A stretch of 63,379 nt of DNA, filler included, from Octopus bimaculoides (Eukaryota): the NCBI RefSeq assembly GCF_001194135.2. It is 8 parts of 7 records of this genome, joined end to end, with 100 filler letters (N's around TTAATTAATTAA, not from the genome) between each part and the next. Parts side by side here need not be neighbours in the genome. Positions count along the whole stretch, not along the records: positions 1 to 14,633 come from NC_068986.1; 7 more parts are not named here. One strand, 5' to 3'. The notes under the pieces were generated by a model, which saw nothing but the letters and a program-made list of their open reading frames with translations, was not told the DNA's origin and ran no database searches. The position numbers and the translations under genes were made by a program. Shown piece by piece: positions 370-31,690 of the stretch. Positions within the stretch are counted from its first letter, which is position 1; the number at the start of each line of letters is the position of its first letter.

Positions 370-1790
370 TTGGGAAAAACTCGGATCTTGATAATTTTCC
401 AAAGTCCTAATGGGCTGGAGTCATCTTTCAAGGTATTGTCCATCATGCTAGTCCATCTGTTGGATCCACATTAGGCAGACTCTCCTTCTCCCAGGAGTTC
501 TCTACATTTAATAAGCCTTTCATAGTAGCACTTCTAAGTCTTTCTATGCAGAGTCACTAACTACAAATGAACTGTCATCCATGCAGACACACTTCTCTCC
601 CACATCCCTGGCACACTGTTTTGCAAGCCGAGACGCTTGAAGCTGCTAGTCCTCACGCTGCATAACATTGGCAAACTTCCTTTCTGCTTCACCCCTGGCT
701 GAATATACCTGCTTCTCTTCTAGCCACTTAATATAGACCCTTGCTAGGGTCAGGTTGGTACTTTGCAGCACCTACAAATTTTGTCTGTGGCTTTAAGTTG
801 TCTCATAGGAACTATATTGTCTTTTAAACTCCTTGTCATCAAATACTTCAGTTGGGAAGTCTCTAAATCTCTATTCAAAGGATCCTTCTTTTCCAAACTA
901 GCTTGCTTCTCGAAATCGTTTGTGCCTGCAGTTTCAAAGTAACTAATGAGTAACCTATGCTGAAGGGTACATTCTTCACCAGAGAAGGATTTTTCATTTA
1001 TGAGCAACCATGAATCCCACTTTCTGGTGAGCTAGCATGGTCACCGGATTTATAGGTTATCAAGTTAGTGGCTGGTTAACTGAAGTTGATGTATATCAGT
1101 AGGTCATTCACATCACAGAACTCCAGCAGCCTTGTTCCCTCCTCTTTTCGGGAACCAATTCCATGTAAACCCCCACTCCACCTTGGGAAGACACCTGGGT
1201 GCTGCCCAACATGCTCATTGAAATTACTAGCTACAAAGATATGGCCACTGTCACTTGTTTTTGATGTAGCCTGCAAGAGTGCCACAGAAAGTCTTTTAGT
1301 TCATTAGGCAGGCCCCAGTGGGGGAGGGGGAATAGGCAGAGATGATTGTTACTGTGCTATCCCACAAAATTAGCTTCATATACTGTGACTACCTCAACCA
1401 CCTGACTTCATTTTTCTACTAAGAGCACGCCAACACCTCCTAACCCATTGCAGTTACCCTCTCAGAAGAGTTTATACCTATGCCTTTTGCCAATGAGGAA
1501 CCTGGCTGAAGCTCCCCTCCACTGAGCTTCTTAGATGCAACACATATCAACACCTCCTTTCAAGCATCTCAATCTTACCAGACCTACCTTTCAATATGCC
1601 TACATTGACTGTACCAACTCCAAGGGAGCGTAAAGGGGGGGCAGGAGGTAAGACGGAGGGGGAACTGTGCTTTACGGCATCTAAAGGGGTTGTAATGAGC
1701 ATTGGCCAGCAGACATGTCATAACAATTGTCCTCGTATTCAAGCCACCATCATTAGTATAAGCAATGTTAGCACAGGTACAAGTCAATAC
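370..1790 (-). mobile_element. Degenerate RTE-clade LINE (endonuclease/linker region)
   Basis: Broken frames include DFNEHVG-like and GIGSRKEEGTRLLEFCDVNDLLI motifs; homologous to the 14300-14632 fragment (gagaagtgtgtctgcatggatga). Confidence 0.7.
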
Positions 1791-2295: not shown

Positions 2296-3929
2296 TCTAT
2301 ATATATATAAAAATGAGAATGTGCGTCTGTATCCCTAAAACTCGAGAACTACGCAACCAATTTCATTCAAATTTTACAAATGCCTTACTCAGGGTTCCAG
2401 TTGTTTTAGCCAAAAATTTTTTGAAAGAGAGAAAGAGAGAGAGAGAAAGAGAGAGAGAGAAAGAGAGAAAGAGAGAGAGAGAGAAATGTATATGTATATG
2501 TATACATATAGATGTATATGTACACGTCATTACTCTAATTGAAACAATCACATTTCGATACTGTAATGACAGATACTTTCAGAGAGAGAGAGATGTATAT
2601 GTATATAGATGTATATGTACACGTATATGTATAGATATATATGCATACATGTATATGTATACATATGTGTAGATGTATATATATATATAGATGTACATGT
2701 AATATGTACACATATATACATACATACAGATATCTATACATATATACAGCCATCACACACATGGACACAAACACACACACACATAAGTCATTTGTTTTCT
2801 TATCCAAAACTACGTCAAAAGTACAGAATGGATCTTTATGAAATTTGGAAATTACATTCTATGCATAACGGCCATAACTCCCATGGAAATTCNNNNNNNN
2901 NNNNNNNNNNNNNNNNNNNNNNNNNNNNNNNNNNNNNNNNNNNNNNNNNNNNNNNNNNNNNNNNNNNNNNNNNNNNNNNNNNNNNNNNNNNNNNNNNNNN
3001 NNNNNNNNNNNNNNNNNNNNNNNNNNNNNNNNNNNNNNNNNNNNNNNNNNNNNNNNNNNNNNNNNNNNNNNNNNNNNNNNNNNNNNNNNNNNNNNNNNNN
3101 NNNNNNNNNNNNNNNNNNNNNNNNNNNNNNNNNNNNNNNNNNNNNNNNNNNNNNNNNNNNNNNNNNNNNNNNNNNNNNNNNNNNNNNNNNNNNNNNNNNN
3201 NNNNNNNNNNNNNNNNNNNNNNNNNNNNNNNNNNNNNNNNNNNNNNNNNNNNNNNNNNNNNNNNNNNNNNNNNNNNNNNNNNNNNNNNNNNNNNNNNNNN
3301 NNNNNNNNNNNNNNNNNNNNNNNNNNNNNNNNNNNNNNNNNNNNNNNNNNNNNNNNNNNNNNNNNNNNNNNNNNNNNNNNNNNNNNNNNNNNNNNNNNNN
3401 NNNNNNNNNNNNNNNNNNNNNNNNNNNNNNNNNNNNNNNNNNNNNNNNNNNNNNNNNNNNNNNNNNNNNNNNNNNNNNNNNNNNNNNNNNNNNNNNNNNN
3501 NNNNNNNNNNNNNNNNNNNNNNNNNNNNNNNNNNNNNNNNNNNNNNNNNNNNNNNNNNNNNNNNNNNNNNNNNNNNNNNNNNNNNNNNNNNNNNNNNNNN
3601 NNNNNNNNNNNNNNNNNNNNNNNNNNNNAAATGAATCACCAAAATTGGCCTTTCATTATTTATAATCTGTACCTGTTTGTTTGGTTACGAAATAAAATAC
3701 ACAAAACGTGTTTCTGAATTACGTGTATTTACTTTATATACATATGAGTTGAAAACTTTCTTCTAGCATTCCACTTAATATCTATGTTCCATGCTGGCAT
3801 GGATTGGAGAGTTATTAATGTAGAAATATGGTATCGTAGCTACTAACAGTTGAGGGTTGCGTAGTCTAGACGGCGTTTTTAGATTTCATTATTCTCTTTA
3901 ACCCAGGCAACGCCGGGTGTTTCTGCTAG
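2296..3929 (+). mobile_element. Non-autonomous Helitron-like element (gap inside)
   Basis: 5' A|TCTATATATATATAAAA; 3' hairpin cccaggcaacgccggg followed by CTAG|T at 3926-3930. Joining the two ends across the gap is inferred. Confidence 0.6.
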
Positions 3930-4515: not shown

Positions 4516-5154
4516 CAGTGGTTCTCAACCAGGGTCCATGTAAAGTTTCTGCTATTAAAATTCACGTGCAATAAATTGCTTATACTTCTACAAGGAAAAA
4601 AAGAAAGAAAATTTATACAGTTAATGTTTCAAGCAAAGTAGCTAAGTTAAGAAAATCTCTATAAGAGATGAAAGTAATAAGTATACTGATAAGAAATATT
4701 TATCAGCACTTGAATATGGCCGCTTCACAGAAACCAACATTACTATTGCTTTTTAACCCCCAAGGAGTCTGATTATTGATGCAATCTGAACCCACCATAC
4801 ATTGCAAGCAGGGGAGCAAGCCCCTACCATCCTCTAGCAGACAACAGGACCACCAGACCATACGGTTTCAAGCTATTTGTGTTCATCCTCAGTGGTAGAC
4901 ACCCATTCACTATAGATAGTAGTAATTCGATCCAGCTCACAATATACACAAAGTGACAATCAGTCACCAGTCTTGCAACAGATGAAAGTAGTAACTATAC
5001 TGAGAAGTAATGCTTTTCGCCACTTTTTATATTTCATCATAAAAATACAAGAAGATTTTTTTTTTAAACTTTTAATAGCTAAGGGAGTCTGCCAGAGTAA
5101 AATAGAGAAACCAAAGGGCTCCACAGACAAAAAAAGAATGGTTGAGAACCACTG
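4516..5154. mobile_element. hAT/Charlie-type MITE termini in RPS15A intron 4
   Basis: cagtggttctcaacc at 4516 and its reverse complement ggttgagaaccactg ending at 5154. The 8-bp flanks do not match, so these may be two elements. The same terminus occurs at about 62060-62074. Confidence 0.55.
4850..4898 (-). ncRNA. Type I hammerhead ribozyme motif in RPS15A intron 4 (sense), weak stem II
   Basis: Minus strand: CTACCA-CTGAGGA-TGAACACAAATAGCTT-GAAA-CC-GTAT-GG-TC-TGGTGG. Stem I CUACCA/UGGUGG, core CUGAGGA, GAAA, stem III ACC/GGU, GUC cleavage triplet. Confidence 0.7.
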
Positions 5155-7455: not shown

Positions 7456-9839
7456 TTTTAGAGCTGCAAAATATTGTAAACTTCATTTCAACATCTTATA
7501 AAGAAAAGTAAAGAAGCAACAACTTTTGGTATATTTTATGTTTCGGTCATTCGGCTGTGGCCATGCATCGTCCACTGCCTTGAACTTCTAGTTGAATGAA
7601 TTGACCCCAGTAGTTATATTTTTTTAAAGCCTTGTAGTTATTCTATCGGTCTCTTTTTGCCAAATCGCTAAGTTATGGGGATTGTCAAGTGATGCAGGTA
7701 TTTATATTTACCGATGACATCTACTTAACGTTTTTGTTAGGACATTTATGCATGGCCAACGTAAATCGAATTTGGTGGGAAAACGTTCTCATTTTGGAGT
7801 GGTAAGCCTAGTTTAATACCACCACCGGTTGCGAACACCCCGAGAAAATGATCATGGGCGCTGCCCTTCCTCCTCTGGCTTAGCAATTGAAAAGAAAGAA
7901 CTTTAAAGATGAGAATTCAAACTTTTAGGGCTAGATCAAATAATCAACGGTCATGAATCACCATGACTGCTCATACAAAATTCCCCTTCTGATCACAAGT
8001 CCGAGAAAAATCGTTTATGGAAGACCAGCAGTTGTCCAGGCATACCAGCCTCGCCTCTCCACGCCACCGATGGGAAGGCAAAGGCCGATACAGCTTGGCA
8101 CCAGTGACGTCGCAACTCTTTGTTGCAACTAGGAAAATAACCAACTAAATTCGTATAGAACGAGAAAAAAACTCATGCAAAAATGTTTATCTAATCAGTG
8201 TTGTTTAGCAACAAAGCAACTGACGAAACGAATATTCCAATGAAATTGGCAAGAAAATTAATTTAGAGAGAAAATGGAAGCGATATATTTCATATTCAGT
8301 ATGGTAGCAATGCCAAATGGGCACTACAGCGAGCATTAAAATTTTACTGAACTATAATTTAGCCCCCCCCCCCCCAATAGTTTAAATAGTCTCAAACAAT
8401 TGAATTACAAATAATACTCGAATAAAACAAATCATGTCTGGCAAATTGTGATCTAATTCCACAAACATCGGTGAATGTTCATTGCTAATTAAGTTACCTA
8501 TTTTCGAAATTAACCAGTTTCTTATTTACGAACGCACTAGTCTGGTTCTTTAACATACGAGATCTTTTGAAGGATTATCCATAACACGTGGATTTAGCAT
8601 TAAATTGTATAAATATTCCATGTACCCGTATTATGTTTGCACGTGTTTCATTTACTAGATTTAGAATTACAATTTTCAGTTGCATTGTGGAACCCCCCCC
8701 TCCTCCTCCCATGGTTGTGCAAAGTTTGGGTGGAATATCGCTGGATTAAGTCCAGTCCCTTTTTCCAATATATTTGAATACTGTATTAAGTATAGCCGGA
8801 GTTCGGATGGATCATCCCTGACGAAGAAGAGCACTTCATCTGTAAAATATCTGTGTCTATACCTAAATCTACATTAACAATATCTTTCCTTCAAGACTTT
8901 ATAGATGTAGTTTGATGGCAAATTGCCGCGATTTCTTAACGGGACGAGACACGACTTTGCATGTGTTGTCGGTCTTATAGCTGTTACGCTTCCACATTAG
9001 ATCTAATCGAACAGATTCTATAATCAAAGGCTTACATCCCATCTATTTGTCTATCATTTTACAGTGGATTGATTTGAGAATTTGGATGCTATTTCCAAGC
9101 CAACTGGCGGTTTGTAAAAGGCATACACAGACTTCTGCAAATAAATACAATACATAGAATTACAATTTTCTTTTCTGTAGACATCATAATATCCTGCTTT
9201 TGTTTAGTAGTAGACAACAAAGTGTAGATATGGATGCGATATATACAAAGGATAACGACTAACAATATTAAGAAATATGACGAAAGATAGACTGATGGAT
9301 AAACGGAGAGGCATAAAAATATTTTCAATTTCAACAGCCTTGTTTCTATTTCAAAACTGAAGAATTAATTAGAGAGCTACAAGCATTATCTCGAGCTTTC
9401 TAATTAAATTTTCACCTAAAACGAAGAGATTAATAGAATTTAGGCAACACATAATGATGTTAGTAGCAGAAACACATTAGCAAAAGAGCATTGGATCAAA
9501 GCAGAATTTCTATCATAGACCTTGCAAAATTTGCTAGACTTACAAAAATAGAACAATATTATATATAAATGATCGGTTAATTCCACATTAAAAATTTGTT
9601 GGAAAGAACTAAAGTATTTAAAGAAGGGAAATTAAGGAAAATTTTCGGAGGGTCATTTAGACATCACGTTGTCAATATAAAAATATATAAATCCGACAGC
9701 TACATGAATAAACAAACCAGCAGGTATTACTAACTACGGCCTTATCTTGCTGAAAAAACAACTTTTTATCAAAAGAGTTACGAATTAGGAATAAGATTAA
9801 GCATGATTTACCAGAAGACAAATTAATAACGAGACATAC

Positions 9840-9863
9840 CTTGTGCTGGCTACCGGAAGAAAG
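9840..9863 (-). promoter_or_regulatory. RPS15A: Probable non-coding first exon / 5'TOP (TCT-type) start of RPS15A
   Basis: Minus strand reads ...cgttCTTTCTTCCGGTAGCCAGCACAAG|gtatgt: a pyrimidine tract starting at C followed by a strong donor, typical of ribosomal protein gene first exons. The link to the 7463 acceptor is inferred. Confidence 0.65.
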
Positions 9864-10532
9864 AACGAAAACGAGGCTGAAATTTATGATGTGAAAAAAA
9901 ATCAGGGGAGACAACTCCGGACATTTGAAATTGATTTGAATTTAAAAGGAAGTTTTAACATTAAAATTATTATTATTGTTGTTGTTGTTTCGTATTGATA
10001 GTATAAATTTATACTGTATAAAAATTCGTGTTGTATATTACCATATAAGCGTTGCTCTTTCAGTTACTCGTATAAAAATATGCTGCTCAAACGAAGTGGA
10101 TGTCAACCTTCTGATTTTTGATTCTGTTATTTATTTATTCTAAGGTAAAGTTAACACTTTTCCAGTTTTATATTCCACCCAAACATCGTAAGACACGATT
10201 TCGATTACTAATTGCTTTTGAATGGACATAACTCACACTGGCAACAGCTGTTTATCGCTTCACTTAAATAATCATGAAATGGGCGGGGTTAAAGAATATT
10301 CAGCGTAACAAGACACCTGGTCCAAACCCTGACCACCTGGTGCACGTATTCTTTACTTTCACCGATAAAATGTGATATTATGATGTCCTGCCTCTTAAGA
10401 ATATCTGGCAAGACTTCCTTTTCTCCTGTCTTTCTCTATTCCGGAAATATTTATATGAATTGTGTTTAACGTGGACTGTTATTAATGGTTCAATTCTGGG
10501 TTAAAGTTCAGATTTTTTTATTTTATTTTATT

Positions 10533-10745
10533 ATTCAAATATCGGTTTCAAATTATGGTACAAGGCCAGCAATTTTGGGGGAGGGGATAAGTAGATTACA
10601 TTCCACTGGTACTTATTTTATCGACTACAAAAAGATAAAAGTTAAAGTTGACCTTGGCGGAATTTGAACTCAGAACATAAAGACAGACAAAGTGTCGCTT
10701 GGCATTTTTGCCCGGCGTGCTAAAGATTCTGCCAGATCACCGCCT
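10533..10745 (-). mobile_element. tRNA-derived SINE family C
   Basis: Reverse complement of ggcggcgagctggcagaa..ttagcacgccgggc..ttctgagttcaaattccgcc. Copies at 36112-36312 (+) and two adjacent copies at 46590-46968 (-). Confidence 0.85.
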
Positions 10746-10981
10746 CTTATTTTGTTATTTAAATATTAACACAATTGTCAGAGAGTGAGATAAAATACTG
10801 TCGAGGTTTTGGAATATTTGTGCCCTCCTAAGTCCCATATTTCATGAGGACAACAAAAAAAAGTTTTCGAGGGGTGTAAAATTTGAATTTGTGAGTGTGG
10901 AATCAGAATCGTAATTTCCGTGTTGTGAAATACAAGAGGGACTTCGATAAAATGAGGTCATTTTTTCACAGGAATTTTCAA

Positions 10982-11055
10982 TGGCCGGATAACTGAAGAG
11001 ATGCTGGCGTGGGCTCCCACCCCGGCATCCGAAACTCTGAGTTTTATCATGGCTA
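10982..11055 (+). ncRNA. Type I hammerhead ribozyme motif (near canonical)
   Basis: TGGCC-G-GATAA-CTGAAGA-GATGCTGG-C-GTGG-GCTC-CCAC-C-CCGGCATC-C-GAAA-CTC-T-GAG-TT-TTATC-AT-GGCTA. All three stems pair; core CUGAAGA/GAAA; GUU triplet at 11041-11043; one extra C before GAAA. Confidence 0.85.
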
Positions 11056-11123
11056 CCGAATAACTGTCACATATTTTTACAGATATATATATTTACTTTT
11101 TTTACCCCCCTAAACTTTAAGAT

Positions 11124-11162
<39 letters not shown>

Positions 11163-11995
11163 ATATAGGATAAAATCTTTATAAGAATTTATCAAGTAGT
11201 CAGCGTGAAAAAACCCCATAAGGAAAAAAACCCATCGNNNNNNNNNNNNNNNNNNNNNNNNNNNNNNNNNNNNNNNNNNNNNNNNNNNNNNNNNNNNNNN
11301 NNNNNNNNNNNNNNNNNNNNNNNNNNNNNNNNNNNNNNNNNNNNNNNNNNNNNNNNNNNNNNNNNNNNNNNNNNNNNNNNNNNNNNNNNNNNNNNNNNNN
11401 NNNNNNNNNNNNNNNNNNNNNNNNNNNNNNNNNNNNNNNNNNNNNNNNNNNNNNNNNNNNNNNNNNNNNNNNNNNNNNNNNNNNNNNNNNNNNNNNNNNN
11501 NNNNNNNNNNNNNNNNNNNNNNNNNNNNNNNNNNNNNNNNNNNNNNNNNNNNNNNNNNNNNNNNNNNNNNNNNNNNNNNNNNNNNNNNNNNNNNNNNNNN
11601 NNNNNNNNNNNNNNNNNNNNNNNNNNNNNNNNNNNNNNNNNNNNNNNNNNNNNNNNNNNNNNNNNNNNNNNNNNNNNNNNNNNNNNNNNNNNNNNNNNNN
11701 NNNNNNNNNNNNNNNNNNNNNNNNNNNNNNNNNNNNNNNNNNNNNNNNNNNNNNNNNNNNNNNNNNNNNNNNNNNNNNNNNNNNNNNNNNNNNNNNNNNN
11801 NNNNNNNNNNNNNNNNNNNNNNNNNNNNNNNNNNNNNNNNNNNNNNNNNNNNNNNNNNNNNNNNNNNNNNNNNNNNNNNNNNNNNNNNNNNNNNNNNNNN
11901 NNNNNNNNNNNNNNNNNNNNNNNNNNNNNNNNNNNNNNNNNNNNNNNNNNNNNNNNNNNNNNNNNNNNNNNNNNNATATATATATATATATATAT

Positions 11996-12370
11996 AGGCG
12001 TGGTTGTGTGGTAAGAAGCTTGCTTCCCAACCACATTGTTCTGAGTTCAGTCCCACTGCATGGCACCTTGAGCAAGTGTCTTCTATAGCCTCAGGCTGAC
12101 CAAAGCCTTGTGAGTGGATTTGGTAGGCGGAAACTGGAGGAAGCCCGTCGTATATGTCTATGTGTGTGTCTGTGTTTGTCCCCCACCACTGTTTGATAAC
12201 TGGTGTCAGTGTGTTTACGTCCCCATAACTTAACTGTTCTCGGCAAAAGAGACTGACAGAATAAGTACTAGGCTTAGAAAATAAGTCCTGGGATCAATTT
12301 ATTCGACTAAAAAAACACTTCAAGGTGGTGCTCCAGCATGGCACAGTCAAATGACTGAAACAAGTAAAAG
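11996..12370 (+). mobile_element. Composite SINE: family A head, microsatellite, family B body
   Basis: Family B (tgtttgtcccc...gatagaataagtactagg...aaatgactgaaacaagtaaaag) also occurs at 13945-14145, 18290-18492, 28805-29020, 52890-52995, 61805-61992 and inverted at about 7540-7680. Confidence 0.85.
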
Positions 12371-28088: not shown

Positions 28089-30499
28089 CATATTGCTTTA
28101 ACATGTCTTTTTTATGCAGATATTTGTTGAACAGGACTATTTTTGCAGAAATCCTTTTACGACTTCAACAACTTCAGAAAAAACATCTCTATCTTGTGTC
28201 ATTTCATGTTAGACCCCAAATACGCAAACACTTGTTGCTAATCCACAAAATATTTCTTTGCAACCTGACCTGTAACAGAAAGATAAGAAAATTGTAACAG
28301 TAATCAACAAACAGTTAATACACACACAAATATAACCAACCATACACTACTTTTGTTGATGTCATAAGAATTTATAAACTTTGAGAGAATGTGAAATAAT
28401 TCTTTTAAAACATTGGATCATGAAGCAGATAGGCTACAAATTATTGTTTATAGCTTATATGTTTCATAATCCAACATTCCAAAATAGAATTGATACACTT
28501 CCTTATGTTGTATGGTACTACGGTCCATCTTTGAATGGTTCTGTTAGCATTTTAGTTTTTCTTTGAAAATAGCATATTTCCTTCTCAACTGTTCTACTTC
28601 CTGAAGGAGGCTGTGTGGTAAGAAAGCTTGCTTCCCAACCACATGGTTCAGGTTCTATCCTACTGTATGGCACCTTGAGCAAGTGTCTTCTAGTATAGCC
28701 TTGGGATGACCAAAGCCTTGTGAGTGGAACTAGTAGATGGAAACTGAAAGAAGCCTCTCGTATAAGTGTATATATATATATATATGTGTGTGTCTATCTT
28801 TGTGTCTGTGTTTGTCCCCTCACCATTATCACTGCTTGATAACCAGAGCTGGTGTGCTTTTAGTCCCTGTCACTTAGTGGTTCAGTAAAAGAGACAGATA
28901 GAATAAGTATCAGGCTTGAAACAAAAATAAATACTGGGATCACTACATTCAACTAAAATGTTTTCATAGTGGTGCCCCAGCATGGCCTTAGTCTAATGAC
29001 TAAAACAAGTAAAAGATACAAGTGATCCGCCTCATCTTTCTTACAGTAGAATGTAACTTACTCTGAGCGAGACAGACAGACAGGCAGACAGTACTTAACT
29101 TGTAATTTTATTTATTGATCCCTGGATGACAAAATATAAAGTTGGCTTTCATGGTATTTAAGTTCAGAATACAGAAAGCCAGAACAGATACAACAAAGCA
29201 CTCAATCCAATGCTCTACAGCCTTTGCCAATTCGCTACCTACATACTCAGTAGGGATAAAATCCAATTACTTATGTACAACTAAGGTGGTCTAACCACAT
29301 CATGTGGGGAAACAATTCTTCAATTAATTCTGACATATATTTGAATAACATAACAGTCATTTACACCAGTAAAAATATTTGGATTGAAGTAATTGATTAA
29401 ATGTCTTCTTTTCAAAGAAAGTAAATATTATGTATATACGTTATCGTATTTAAAGAAGAAGTCAATGTTTTTAATCTATATCATTGATAAAACTTTCTAG
29501 TCTTGATACATTTAGTGTTAAAATGAGAAGTAATGCTGATCGATCTATGGTTGTGTACTAGTATGACAGTTGAAAGTTATTAATATGGGCTAATTTTACG
29601 TTAAAAAGTGGAACATAAAATTTCATGCATTTTAGACCACCTTATGGTCCCAGTAGACAAAATGGAAAAGGTATTGCTCTGGAGGATAGTGAAAGACTTG
29701 CACTGGAACAGTCACTCCGACCTACAGGGCTAACACTTGCGGATGGCCTTCTCCATCCCGATAGTAGTGAGAAGGGATATGTTCGGGGTTGGGGGCTAAG
29801 AACGCTGGAGGTCTCCACTGTCAGAGAGTTTACTTGACAGTTTACTTCTCTCAGCCTGCCAAGCAGCAGAGACTGGGCTATTTTCAATGTTATATTTTGA
29901 GTACGTACAACTAGATGTTAATGTTGTCTTCTAGCTGTATTACAGATTTGCTTTCCTAAATCTTAATTCAGTATTGAGATTGGTTGTTATAAACCCATTA
30001 TCAATGAGTGTCATGAAGTAAACAGTGTGCTCCTAACAAGCCAATGATGCAAGTTTTACATCCTTATTGAAGCCCTTTTACTTTACTTACACTGTTGATT
30101 TATAGGGAACATCTTGAACATCTCACATTCAATGCTATAATTCTGCCACATTGTATTTATTAAAAAAAATTACAAATTTGATAAGAGTGATGTATGTCTT
30201 TTCATTTCTCACAATCTCAGTTTCAAATCTTGTCAGCAACACTTATATATCTCAGTCCTACTGGGATGAAAGGTAAACAGAACAAATAGGAATATACTTG
30301 ACTATACTTCCAGTAATTAAAGGCAAAAGAAAAATCTAAGAGAATTTCAATTCAGAAAAATGAGACACAAAAATAAATATGAATAGTACATTGACTAATT
30401 CTCTGTTGTCTGCTCCATCAAACTGTTAATACTAACTATTCTCTTTCAATTTCTCAAAACTGTTGACTAGTTTACATCTGTTGCATTTTAAAAAACAGC

Positions 30500-31690
30500 T
30501 TTCATAATATCTACTATATCGCTTGTCCCATAGCGTTTATGGTCCTTTACTGTACCATTCTACACCACATCATTTTCCATCAAGCTGGAACCTTGCACTA
30601 TCCACAATAAAAGTCTATATGGCTTACATTTTCATCTTATTGATAGCTGATCGAGTAGATGGCAGGTTTCATAAAGTTAGTGCAGCAAATAGTTATGTCA
30701 TCTACATGATACAACTCCAAGAGACTTGATCTATAGTCATTCTTTGTACCATATGCATGTACTTTGGATAACCATCATAGTGTTATCCAACATTTTAAAA
30801 GTCAGTAGCCATAATAACAACATTGCTGTGGTTCATTACTGAGATAGTCTACAAAACAATCAAATAGGCCCTTTTGTTAATCTCTTAACCGTTATTGTAG
30901 CGCATGTGCAGAGATCACTGTAGCTCTCATTGCTTATAACTAGTGTTACATACACTATCTCAGTTACTTTATCTCACCATTTCTCTGTACAATATGCTTA
31001 CACTACCCATTCCAACCCTGTTACCAATTCAGAAGAATCTGTATCTGTGAAGAATGTAAGACTCCATTCCATTTTCTTGTACACAGCACACATCTACTTC
31101 ACTCTGATTTAGCATCTCTACAATCTCTACTTTCATTATATCAACATTGATAATAACAGTTCCTTAGTGTTTAACCGGACAGAATAAGAACATTTTTTGG
31201 TGGTGGAGTTTTGGAGTTGTTTGATGCCCATCTCCTGCATCTTAAAGGAAGAAAAGGACTTAAATGCCCTTACTGTATTGTGTCACGTTTTATTCAGGTT
31301 ACTACTTTCTATGAGTTTATTTCATTGCAGTTTAAGGAGCCCAATCTCCAGCCAGCAAAATTTCATTTAAAGTTACTGCTCTCTAGTCAGATTGCCTTCA
31401 CTACAGCTGAAGAGCCATGTTTCTCCATTATGTTCCTAGAGGTACTCACAGTGTTCATAGAAGTGAGGAGAACTTTATAAGTCATAGGTGCTTAGTTCTA
31501 GGTCAACCACCATTGAGCTGGACAACAAAGGGCACAGTATTCAGGACTGTGGGGACTATCATATAGGAATCTCTTACTCTCATTGTCAGGATAACTGGAA
31601 TAATTACATTAATGGCAAGTAAGATATGGAGGGGACCCATCTTGTCACTGAGCAGACATATTTACTAGTTGGGACAGCATGTCTTCATAG
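30500..31690 (-). mobile_element. Highly decayed LINE RT remnant
   Basis: Minus frame ..SDKMGPLHILLAIN.. resembles the QGxxLGPLLFLIxIN motif; many stops. Confidence 0.3.

What the first reader, a model, noticed from the sequence alone, without database searches (positions are those of the whole stretch)
10982..11055. Near-canonical hammerhead ribozyme between RPS15A and GGCT, probably sense in the GGCT 5' intron
Seen: intact CUGAAGA and GAAA core, GUU triplet, stem I GATAA/TTATC extended by TGGCC/GGCTA across a small internal loop, and a long stem II. Stem III is the near-palindrome ACTC-T-GAGT, typical of hammerheads that cleave as dimers. The only defect is one extra C before GAAA. It lies about 1.1 kb from the RPS15A start and 2.1 kb upstream of the GGCT coding exon, on the GGCT strand. 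Inference: if GGCT starts at the shared promoter, the nascent transcript could self-cleave here.
Basis: partly seen in the sequence, partly recalled or inferred. Interest (0 to 1): 0.75.

Follow-up and report, generated by a model that had tools for sequence, protein, structure and literature searches.

The report
Solitary transposon-derived hammerhead ribozyme relic
The octopus sequence really does contain a hammerhead self-cleaving RNA motif, but it looks like a lone leftover of a Penelope-like retrotransposon inserted next to a TA microsatellite, is missing from three related octopod genomes, and gives no sign of being a regulator of the neighbouring GGCT gene.

Summary
Window 10982-11055 (+), which is Octopus bimaculoides, carries a complete type I hammerhead layout. 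It has the CUGAAGA and GAAA core, A15.1-U16.1, a GUU cleavage triplet, and helix I of 5+5 bp. Helix II has 8+4 bp, and helix III is the near-palindrome ACUC-U-GAGU. One extra C sits at the 3' base of helix II.

Chance is very unlikely. A descriptor scan found no comparable site in 40 Mb of composition-matched random sequence. Rfam's Hammerhead_1 is the best family match but scores only 13.1 bits against a threshold of 34.

The motif, and the roughly 480-bp non-coding block that it ends, are absent from the fully covered RPS15A-GGCT intergenic regions of O. sinensis, O. vulgaris and Argonauta hians.

The motif lies about 70 nt upstream of a (TA)n microsatellite. Hammerheads of Penelope-like elements (PLEs) that I found in O. 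vulgaris and Argonauta sit 58-69 nt from theirs. Its long helix II, short helix I and palindromic helix III match published PLE hammerheads.

The best reading is a solo relic of a 5'-truncated PLE or a retrozyme-like derivative, probably weak or inactive as a monomer. Whether GGCT transcripts cross it could not be tested. It is a new member of a known kind, of low interest.

The parts
10982..10986 (+). Outer closing stem of helix I, 5' strand (UGGCC). It pairs with 11051-11055 across a 1x2 internal loop (G10987 / A11049-U11050).
   Evidence: Sequence; pairing checked.
10988..10992 (+). Helix I, 5' strand (GAUAA). It gives 5 bp with 11044-11048.
   Evidence: Rfam alignment.
10993..10999 (+). 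Hammerhead core box C3-A9 (CUGAAGA).
11000..11030 (+). Helix II hairpin. G10.1...C11.1, 8 bp (one G-U), C-C mismatch, 4 bp, loop GCUC. One surplus C (11029 or 11030) is bulged or unpaired next to G12.
11031..11034 (+). Core box G12 A13 A14 A15.1 (GAAA).
11034..11042 (+). Helix III, the near-palindrome ACUC-U-GAGU. As a monomer it gives 3 bp plus a CUG triloop. Between two copies it gives 8 bp with a central U-U.
11043..11043 (+). H17 (U of the GUU triplet). The predicted scissile bond is 11043/11044.
   Evidence: Position follows from the core alignment. Cleavage itself was not tested.
11044..11055 (+). Helix I 3' strand (UUAUC), the AU of the internal loop, and the outer stem 3' strand (GGCUA).
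10420..11125 (+). O. bimaculoides-specific non-coding block that ends with the hammerhead. It is about 482 bp once the SINE and one TSD copy are removed. It has no open reading frame and no counterpart in O. sinensis, O. vulgaris or Argonauta. The left boundary is uncertain.
10543..10747 (-). Octopus SINE inserted into the block. It is flanked by 19-bp target-site duplications at 10524-10542 and 10748-10766 (17/19 identical). The block is therefore older than this SINE insertion.
   Evidence: (family D10); SINE copies matched.
11126..11157 (.). (TA)n microsatellite 71-78 nt downstream of the hammerhead, with a shorter TA run at 11083-11093. It is part of an ancestral (TA)n tract that is also present in O. 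vulgaris and O. sinensis. This is the proposed insertion target.
11238..11975 (.). Assembly gap (738 N), flanked on its right by (TA)n and a second SINE (about 11997-12375). Its content is unknown and it could hide further element copies.

Best explanation
The motif is the 3'-terminal hammerhead of a retrotransposon insertion. Most likely this was a 5'-truncated Penelope-like element (PLE) or a non-autonomous, retrozyme-like derivative of one. It landed in a (TA)n microsatellite between RPS15A and GGCT in the O. bimaculoides lineage.

In the parent element such hammerheads sit in the terminal repeat. They are thought to process multimeric or tandem element transcripts, pairing two copies through the palindromic helix III.

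Here only one copy is left in the assembled sequence. A SINE has since inserted into the block, and the motif carries a surplus C beside the core. If the region is transcribed on the + strand, the RNA could at best cleave slowly at 11043/11044. Most probably it is a weak or dead relic with no host function.

Shown: the motif, its non-chance nature, its absence in three related genomes, its position relative to (TA)n, the later SINE, and the presence of PLEs with hammerheads in octopod genomes.

Inferred: PLE parentage of this particular copy, direction and timing of the insertion, and low activity.
For: 1. Real hammerhead architecture. Null expectation.
2. Lineage-specific: the complete intergenic regions of O. 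sinensis (L002+L068), O. vulgaris (L004/L069) and Argonauta (L001) lack both the motif and the 482-bp block. This holds by BLAST at word size 7 and by descriptor scan. The flanks align: 9805-10419 at 76-77% and 12395-13500 at 84-85%.
3. The block is non-coding and contains a SINE with 17/19 TSDs.
4. Geometry shared with octopod PLE loci. In Argonauta L075 (an ORF with a faint GIY-YIG hit), a minimal hammerhead at 7484-7522 lies 69 nt before (TA)n, with an inverted twin at about 1170-1205. In O. vulgaris L070, a U3-A8 variant hammerhead at 7723-7767 lies about 58 nt before (TA)n. In the window the distance is 71-78 nt.
5. Architecture matches the published PLE hammerhead description: helix II of 7-8 bp, helix I of 4-5 bp, conserved G10.1-C11.1, palindromic 15.2-16.2/loop 3, mostly solitary copies taken to be truncated PLEs, and little or no activity as single motifs (PMC4209133).
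6. A (TA)n insertion preference is reported for PLEs, along with assembly problems around them (PMC8557442).
7. Octopus genomes do hold canonical RT + GIY-YIG PLE ORFs.
8. Dispersed monomer copies of hammerhead retroelements are common in other animals (bioRxiv 10.64898/2026.07.22.740005).
Against: - No second copy of this particular hammerhead or its block was found, so family membership rests on architecture and geometry, not on sequence homology.
- There is no similarity to the three octopod hammerhead-bearing elements examined.
- No RT/GIY-YIG remnant adjoins it.
- The surplus nucleotide is on the 3' side of helix II, not between A9 and G10.1 as in published PLE hammerheads.
- Helix III (3-4 bp) and helix II (12 bp in all) are larger than in the minimal PLE motifs.
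- All 25 helix pairs are intact despite the block pre-dating a SINE whose TSDs have diverged. This could hint at a young insertion or at constraint.
- With one outgroup comparison, insertion in O. bimaculoides cannot be formally separated from loss in the O. vulgaris/sinensis lineage.
- The whole O. bimaculoides genome and repeat libraries could not be searched with these tools.
Confidence: 0.7

Rival explanations
1. One reading: a working hammerhead embedded, in sense, in a long 5' intron of GGCT transcribed from a promoter shared with RPS15A. It would cut the nascent GGCT transcript and so affect GGCT expression.
For: The motif is on the GGCT strand, 1.1 kb from the RPS15A 5' exon and upstream of the GGCT ATG exon. 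Plausible 3' splice acceptors precede the ATG at about 13105 and 13171, so an upstream non-coding exon is possible. The head-to-head RPS15A/GGCT arrangement is conserved to Argonauta. The core is intact.
Against: The motif is absent from the orthologous intergenic region of three octopods. The intergenic span varies from about 3.3 to about 12 kb through transposon turnover. There is no evidence on the GGCT TSS. A single copy has a dimer-type helix III, an extra C, and a competing fold 3.4-4 kcal/mol more stable than the hammerhead fold. The context is that of a transposon end.
Confidence: 0.05
2. One visible unit of an active hammerhead retroelement array (a non-LTR retrozyme or tandem PLE) whose other copies lie in the 738-N assembly gap. 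Two adjacent copies would allow dimeric cleavage and circular RNA formation.
For: The gap begins 183 nt downstream of the motif and is bordered by (TA)n. PLE and retrozyme tandems are a known cause of assembly breaks (PMC8557442). The helices are fully intact. Type I hammerheads of animals usually occur in tandem repeats (PMC7229834).
Against: No repeat of the unit is visible in the assembled 838 bp around it. There is no second core match with helices in the window. Unique sequence (11158-11237) and a (TA)n run separate the motif from the gap. A SINE has disrupted the block.
Confidence: 0.1
3. A chance constellation of short motifs and hairpins with no hammerhead ancestry.
For: Rfam scores it far below threshold (13.1 against 34 bits, E = 1.2 even in 88 nt), with no hit at gathering cut-offs. 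A second bare core-pattern match occurs at 4856-4892 (-), which shows that core strings alone occur by chance.
Against: The descriptor null gave 1 relaxed site and 0 at observed helix lengths in 40 Mb. Scaling that single count by about 0.37 per extra pair gives roughly one site per genome for the helix lengths scored. That figure comes before the extra 5-bp outer helix I and 4-bp distal helix II are counted, and those lower it further. The palindromic helix III and the PLE-like distance to (TA)n are independent of the descriptor.
Confidence: 0.03

Closest known systems
Minimal/variant type I hammerheads of Penelope-like elements (Cervera & de la Pena 2014, PMC4209133)
   Same: Type I topology. 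Long helix II (8 bp to the first mismatch) and short helix I (5 bp). G10.1-C11.1 pair. Palindromic helix III/loop 3, implying dimeric action. One unpaired nucleotide at the base of helix II. Solitary genomic copy. Position tens of nucleotides from the element's 3' end at a (TA)n target, as in the octopod PLE copies L070 and L075.
   Different: The unpaired nucleotide is on the 3' strand (before G12) rather than between A9 and G10.1. Helix III has 3-4 potential pairs instead of 1. Helix II carries an extra distal 4-bp segment. No RT/GIY-YIG ORF or second flanking repeat adjoins it. No sequence similarity to the octopod PLE hammerheads found here.
Non-LTR retrozymes / satellite-type type I hammerheads of animals (newt satellite 2, Schistosoma Sm-alpha, coral, mussel and axolotl retrozymes; PMC7229834)
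   Same: Type I hammerhead with weak palindromic helix III. AT-rich non-coding host element of a few hundred bp. Dispersed monomers are known.
   Different: No tandem repeat in the assembled sequence. Helix I/II lengths (5 and 8+4 bp) differ from the canonical 6 and 4 bp that support loop-loop contacts. Expression and circular RNA are unknown.
Rfam Hammerhead_1 (RF00163)
   Same: Best-scoring Rfam family for the 88-nt stretch. Full-length alignment of the model (positions 1-45), with all core positions matched and helix III aligned to the model's palindromic ACGcgCGU.
   Different: 13.1 bits against a gathering score of 34. The 29-nt helix II is treated as an insertion. A second octopod hammerhead-like motif, from an inverted-repeat element in a (TA)n tract (L069), also scores below threshold at 15.1 bits. 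The cut-off therefore also fails a second octopod motif of this kind.
Conserved intronic hammerheads of amniotes (HH9/HH10)
   Different: Those are conserved at orthologous positions across many species. This one is absent in all three related genomes examined.

Membership tests
Hammerhead ribozyme, type I | Conserved core: C3 U4 G5 A6 N7 G8 A9 ... G12 A13 A14, the A15.1-U16.1 pair, and H17 not G. | tested here: met
   CUGAAGA at 10993-10999, GAAA at 11031-11034, U16.1 at 11042, U17 at 11043.
Hammerhead ribozyme, type I | Three helices around the core, with helix I open and helices II and III capped. | tested here: met
   Helix I 5 (+5) bp, helix II 8 (+4) bp, helix III 3 bp + triloop or 4+4 palindrome.
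Hammerhead ribozyme, type I | G10.1-C11.1 stacked directly on the G12/A9 core, with no inserted nucleotide. | tested here: inconclusive
   A G-C pair is available, but one surplus C must either bulge after it (-22.5 kcal/mol) or sit between C11.1 and G12 (-25.9 kcal/mol). Some core insertions in natural variants lower activity strongly, while others that can point outward may be accommodated (PMC3088659).
Hammerhead ribozyme, type I | Score at or above Rfam's gathering threshold for RF00163 (34 bits). | tested here: not met
   No hit at gathering cut-offs. 13.1 bits, E = 1.2, when 88 nt are searched alone.
Hammerhead ribozyme, type I | Site-specific self-cleavage giving 2',3'-cyclic phosphate and 5'-OH ends. 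| not testable with these tools
   Needs an in vitro transcription/cleavage assay or end mapping. The secondary-structure model puts only 0.17% of the ensemble in a core-unpaired state, but it ignores tertiary structure.
PLE-associated hammerhead (Cervera & de la Pena 2014) | Long helix II (6-8 bp) with short helix I (4-5 bp). | tested here: met
   8 bp and 5 bp before the first interruption. Criteria from PMC4209133.
PLE-associated hammerhead (Cervera & de la Pena 2014) | Unpaired nucleotide between A9 and G10.1. | tested here: not met
   A9 is followed directly by G10.1. The surplus base is on the opposite strand, before G12.
PLE-associated hammerhead (Cervera & de la Pena 2014) | Palindromic 15.2-16.2 / loop 3, allowing an intermolecular helix III. 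| tested here: met
   ACUC-U-GAGU is self-complementary except for the central U.
PLE-associated hammerhead (Cervera & de la Pena 2014) | Located in the terminal repeat / 3' region of an element encoding RT and GIY-YIG endonuclease. | tested here: inconclusive
   No ORF in the block. The 71-78 nt distance to (TA)n matches the octopod PLE copies L075 (69 nt) and L070 (about 58 nt), whose 3' non-coding regions are 1.0-1.4 kb. This is consistent with 5' truncation but is not proof.
PLE-associated hammerhead (Cervera & de la Pena 2014) | Belongs to a multi-copy consensus family with covarying helices in the same genome. | not testable with these tools
   No eukaryotic genome-wide DNA search was available. 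About 195 kb of octopod loci (several overlapping) held no relative. Scans of metagenome, prokaryotic-genome and viral collections found none.
Non-LTR retrozyme (Cervera & de la Pena 2020) | Head-to-tail tandem repeats of about 170-400 bp, each with a hammerhead. | tested here: not met
   Single copy, with no direct repeat of the unit in 10400-11237 or elsewhere in the window. The adjacent 738-N gap leaves a loophole.
Non-LTR retrozyme (Cervera & de la Pena 2020) | Expressed as unit-length linear and circular RNA. | not testable with these tools
   No transcript data were accessible.
Conserved intronic hammerhead (HH9/HH10-like) | Orthologous conservation across related species. | tested here: not met
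   Absent from O. sinensis, O. vulgaris and Argonauta orthologous regions, all completely covered.

The most novel reading that the evidence does not exclude
A recently acquired, transposon-borne hammerhead has been co-opted in O. bimaculoides. It would cut + strand transcripts that start at the bidirectional RPS15A promoter, either a long GGCT 5' intron or promoter-upstream divergent RNA. That would make it a lineage-specific ribozyme switch or terminator for a housekeeping gene pair.
Probability: 0.04. Interest if true: 0.6.

Novelty: new member of a known kind. Interest (0 to 1): 0.2.

Why it matters
On the best reading this adds a cephalopod example to the well-documented link between type I hammerheads and Penelope-like or retrozyme retroelements. 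It also shows that such motifs fall well below Rfam's threshold, so they go unannotated.

It has modest practical value. It marks a retroelement end, and it flags an unusual surplus C on the 3' side of helix II that could be tested for its effect on catalysis.

It would matter more only if the motif proved to cleave GGCT or RPS15A-divergent transcripts in vivo. Nothing here supports that.

Tried and rejected
1. Rfam at gathering cut-offs over the whole piece gave nothing. At E<=10 over 539 nt there was still no hammerhead. Only the 88-nt search showed Hammerhead_1, below threshold.
2. A degenerate pattern (core plus base of helix II, optional extra base) scanned against metagenome contigs gave 63 hits. 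All were unrelated bacterial-type sequences or other hammerheads, and none had the extra C or a similar helix II.
3. A tighter pattern found nothing in prokaryotic genomes or viral contigs.
4. Exact look-ups of two short ORFs overlapping the motif found nothing.
5. An HMMER search of a 74-aa open frame across the motif against 1.84 billion representative proteins gave 0 hits.
6. The search for a transcript contig of O. bimaculoides GGCT, to place its TSS, found the protein on the genome record only.
7. I looked for tandem or inverted copies of the unit around the motif and found only TA repeats.
8. I tested whether the block is related to the palindromic hammerhead-bearing element that occupies the orthologous (TA)n in O. 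vulgaris. The alignment score was below the shuffled controls.
9. I tested for similarity to PLE loci L070-L076 and found only TA-rich matches.
10. A tRNA-like head in the block, as in an Sm-alpha-type SINE, was sought and none was found.
11. The second core-pattern match at 4856-4892 (-) has no helices and was dismissed as chance.
12. The dimer cofold merely gives an extended duplex and was not informative.

Full report
**Identity of the window.** The piece is Octopus bimaculoides. It is 100% identical, gaps included, to GCA_001194135.2 chromosome CM046606.1 (locus L003).

RPS15A lies on the minus strand. Its coding exons are at 7455-7322, 5650-5573, 5271-5185 and 4442-4347. A 5' non-coding exon with a pyrimidine-rich (TOP-like) start lies at about 9840-9870. 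That stretch (9813-9918) is the only upstream sequence still alignable to Argonauta.

The first coding exon of GGCT is on the plus strand, starting at 13179. The finding sits between the two genes.

**The observation.** The 74 nt at 10982-11055 read UGGCC-G-GAUAA-CUGAAGA-[helix II]-GAAA-CUC-U-GAG-U-U-UUAUC-AU-GGCUA. This maps onto hammerhead numbering without any substitution in the core.

- C3-A9 is CUGAAGA.
- G12-A14 plus A15.1 is GAAA.
- U16.1 and U17 give a GUU cleavage triplet.
- Helix I has 5 bp, then a 1x2 internal loop and 5 more bp.
- Helix II has 8 bp (one G-U), a C-C mismatch, 4 bp and a GCUC loop.
- Helix III is ACUC-U-GAGU.

The topology is type I, with helix I open. The single irregularity is a surplus C at the 3' base of helix II. 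Rfam's alignment pairs G10.1 with the C adjacent to GAAA. Nearest-neighbour energies prefer the register in which the extra C lies unpaired between C11.1 and G12 (-25.9 against -22.5 kcal/mol).

**Is it more than chance?** A descriptor written for this purpose requires the core boxes plus all three helices. It finds only this site on both strands of the window.

In 40 Mb of first-order Markov sequence with the window's composition it found one site at relaxed thresholds. It found none at the observed helix I and helix II lengths.

Scaling that one count by about 0.37 per extra base pair suggests roughly one such site per 2.7-Gb genome for the lengths scored. This is an inference from a single count and assumes that genome size, which I did not check with a tool here. 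It does not include the additional outer helix I and distal helix II pairs, which lower the figure further. A bare core-string match elsewhere in the window (4856-4892, minus strand) has no helices and is the kind of hit chance does produce.

**Rfam.** Nothing reaches a gathering threshold in the piece. No hammerhead family appears at E<=10 in a 539-nt search. When only 88 nt are searched, Hammerhead_1 (RF00163) is the top family. It aligns end to end but scores 13.1 bits against a threshold of 34, E = 1.2. Most of the loss comes from the long helix II being treated as an insertion.

For calibration, another octopod hammerhead-like motif from an inverted-repeat element in a (TA)n tract scores 15.1 bits. 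A U3-A8 core variant is not reported at all. Failing the Rfam cut-off therefore says little for this class.

**Comparative evidence.** Exact-protein look-ups of RPS15A and GGCT returned the orthologous loci of three species:

- O. sinensis (L002, L068);
- O. vulgaris (L004, L069);
- Argonauta hians (L001).

The head-to-head RPS15A/GGCT arrangement is conserved in all three. The intergenic regions are completely covered.

The flanks align to the two Octopus species. Window 9805-10419 aligns at 76-77% and 12395-13500 at 84-85%. Nothing between 10420 and 12394 aligns except dispersed SINE copies and TA repeats.

The motif and its surrounding block have no counterpart by sensitive BLAST or by descriptor scan. 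The spacing between the two genes' start codons ranges from about 5.7 kb here (with a gap) to about 12 kb in O. sinensis. The differences are transposon insertions.

**What surrounds the motif.** Removing a SINE (10543-10747, minus orientation) and one copy of its 19-bp target-site duplication (10524-10542 / 10748-10766, 17 of 19 identical) leaves a 482-bp block. This block has stops in all frames. It has no tRNA-like head and no internal repeat.

The hammerhead is the last structured feature of the block. A short TA run follows 28 nt after it, then 34 nt of unique sequence, then (TA)n at 11126-11157. Beyond that come 80 nt of unique sequence, the 738-N gap, (TA)n again, a second SINE, (TG)n(TA)n, and then sequence shared with O. 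vulgaris.

The ancestral feature is therefore a (TA)n tract that has been hit repeatedly. In O. vulgaris and O. sinensis the same tract carries a different, palindromic element.

**Link to Penelope-like elements.** Published work describes metazoan PLE hammerheads as follows (PMC4209133):

- type I motifs with a large helix II (7-8 bp) and a short helix I (4-5 bp);
- a conserved G10.1-C11.1 pair;
- one unpaired base at the foot of helix II;
- a palindromic 15.2-16.2/loop 3, implying dimeric action;
- mostly solitary copies attributed to truncated elements;
- little or no cleavage as single motifs.

PLEs are reported to prefer (TA)n targets, to form inverted or tandem structures, and to break short-read assemblies (PMC8557442).

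I found canonical RT + GIY-YIG PLE reading frames in the O. sinensis and O. vulgaris loci. Using one as a query, I fetched further PLE copies.

- In Argonauta L075, a minimal hammerhead (ucu-CUGAUGA-u-acaaa...uuugu-u-GAAA-CUAG-U-U-aga) lies 1.4 kb downstream of the ORF and 69 nt before (TA)n. An identical inverted twin lies upstream of the ORF next to another (TA)n.
- In O. vulgaris L070, a U3-A8 core variant with a CAUG loop lies 1.0 kb downstream of the ORF and about 58 nt before (TA)n.

The window's motif ends 71-78 nt before its (TA)n.

The helix proportions, the palindromic helix III, the distance to the target microsatellite and the long non-coding 3' region all fit the 3' end of a 5'-truncated PLE or a non-autonomous derivative. 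Non-LTR retrozymes have been argued to derive from PLE terminal repeats, and dispersed monomers are common (bioRxiv 10.64898/2026.07.22.740005).

**What does not fit.** No sequence homology links this copy to any PLE I could reach. The surplus base is on the opposite strand from the published position. Helix III is longer than the minimal 1 bp, and helix II has an extra distal segment.

I could not search the O. bimaculoides genome or a repeat library, so copy number and consensus are unknown. Every pair in all three helices is intact, although the block pre-dates a SINE whose duplications have diverged at 2 of 19 positions. That is compatible with a fairly young insertion but would also fit constraint.

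**Likely activity.** The hammerhead-compatible secondary structure is -25.9 to -26.7 kcal/mol, while a rod-like alternative that pairs core nucleotides is -30.1 kcal/mol. In the secondary-structure model only 0.17% of the ensemble keeps the core unpaired. This ignores tertiary stabilisation and is only indicative.

As a monomer helix III is 3 bp with a triloop. Two copies could form 8 bp with a central U-U, but only one copy is present. Helix lengths of 5 and 8+4 bp do not match the 6/4 arrangement that supports loop-loop contacts in fast natural type I ribozymes.

Natural core insertions range from tolerated to strongly impairing (PMC3088659). I estimate roughly a one-in-three chance of measurable monomer cleavage in vitro and a low chance of efficient cleavage in vivo. 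This is inference.

It needs + strand transcription across the site from a promoter shared with RPS15A. The gene ranges available begin at the ATG and end at the stop codon, so they carry no UTR information. No transcript contig for O. bimaculoides GGCT was on record.

Possible splice acceptors precede the GGCT ATG, so an upstream exon cannot be excluded. The lack of conservation and the transposon context make a host role unlikely, but this part remains untested.

**Verdict.** It is best classed as a new, solitary member of the known class of retroelement-borne type I hammerheads, with an unusual surplus C. It is of low general interest unless cleavage of host transcripts is demonstrated.

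Noticed in passing
L069 16340-16800 (O. vulgaris, about 3 kb downstream of GGCT); orthologous copy in O. sinensis at L068 about 16508-16634: A palindromic insertion flanked on both sides by (TA)n. It carries two identical hammerhead-like motifs head to head on opposite strands, 32 nt apart (CCAC-CUGAUGA-A-UGUC...GACA-A-GAAA-CGAUCG-U-A-GUGG). Helix III is a perfect palindrome, but position 10.1/11.1 is A-A. Rfam Hammerhead_1 scores 15.1 bits. It looks like two 5'-truncated PLE-type ends joined in inverted orientation.
   Followed up: partly
L004 8985-9560 (O. vulgaris, equivalent to window about 10750-12394): At the orthologous (TA)n tract, O. vulgaris carries a shorter copy of the same palindromic element family. 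It aligns to the L069 copy with score 179 against about 30-37 for shuffles. It lacks the central hammerhead part. The same microsatellite was therefore hit independently in the two lineages.
   Followed up: partly
L070 7723-7767 (O. vulgaris): A minimal hammerhead with the U3-A8 core covariation (UUGAUAA ... GAAA), a G10.1-C11.1 helix II of 5 bp and a palindromic CAUG loop. It lies 1 kb downstream of a PLE ORF and about 58 nt before (TA)n. Rfam does not report it even at E<=10.
   Followed up: partly
L075 7484-7522 (+) and about 1170-1205 (-) (Argonauta hians): Two identical minimal hammerheads in inverted orientation flank a PLE ORF (HTH_animal hit, faint GIY-YIG hit). Each lies about 70-105 nt from a (TA)n run. 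The 3' tail contains CCCCCTAA, as does the window's tail (11104-11113).
   Followed up: partly
L002 about 18408-19720 (-) and L004 about 28744-31104 (-): Canonical Penelope-like element reading frames (RT motifs plus a CCHH/GIY-YIG endonuclease) lie just beyond the 3' end of RPS15A in O. sinensis and O. vulgaris. An inverted-repeat structure follows the stop codon, and duplicated fragments of RPS15A-region sequence lie nearby. They are absent from the O. bimaculoides window.
   Followed up: partly
window 10543-10747 (-); also 23-226, 11997-12375, 13937-14147: Several copies of octopus SINE families. The one at 10543-10747 has clear 19-bp target-site duplications (17/19).
   Followed up: partly
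L004 10001-29442 (O. vulgaris): The O. vulgaris annotation includes a 166-aa RPS15A isoform. Its coding range starts about 5.5 kb upstream of the canonical promoter, inside the RPS15A-GGCT intergenic region. This implies an annotated transcript on the RPS15A strand through that region in that species.
   Followed up: no
window 4856-4892 (-): A second match to the bare hammerhead core pattern (CUGAGGA...GAAAC...GUC) inside an RPS15A intron. It has no helices I-III and is judged to be chance.
   Followed up: yes
window 14216-14633 (+) and 750-1307: Fragments of non-LTR (LINE-type) retrotransposon reading frames. The one at 14216 runs off the edge of the piece.
   Followed up: no
window 2893-3628 and 11238-11975: Two assembly gaps of nearly equal size (736 and 738 N), both bordered by microsatellite sequence. 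They persist in the chromosome-level assembly.
   Followed up: no
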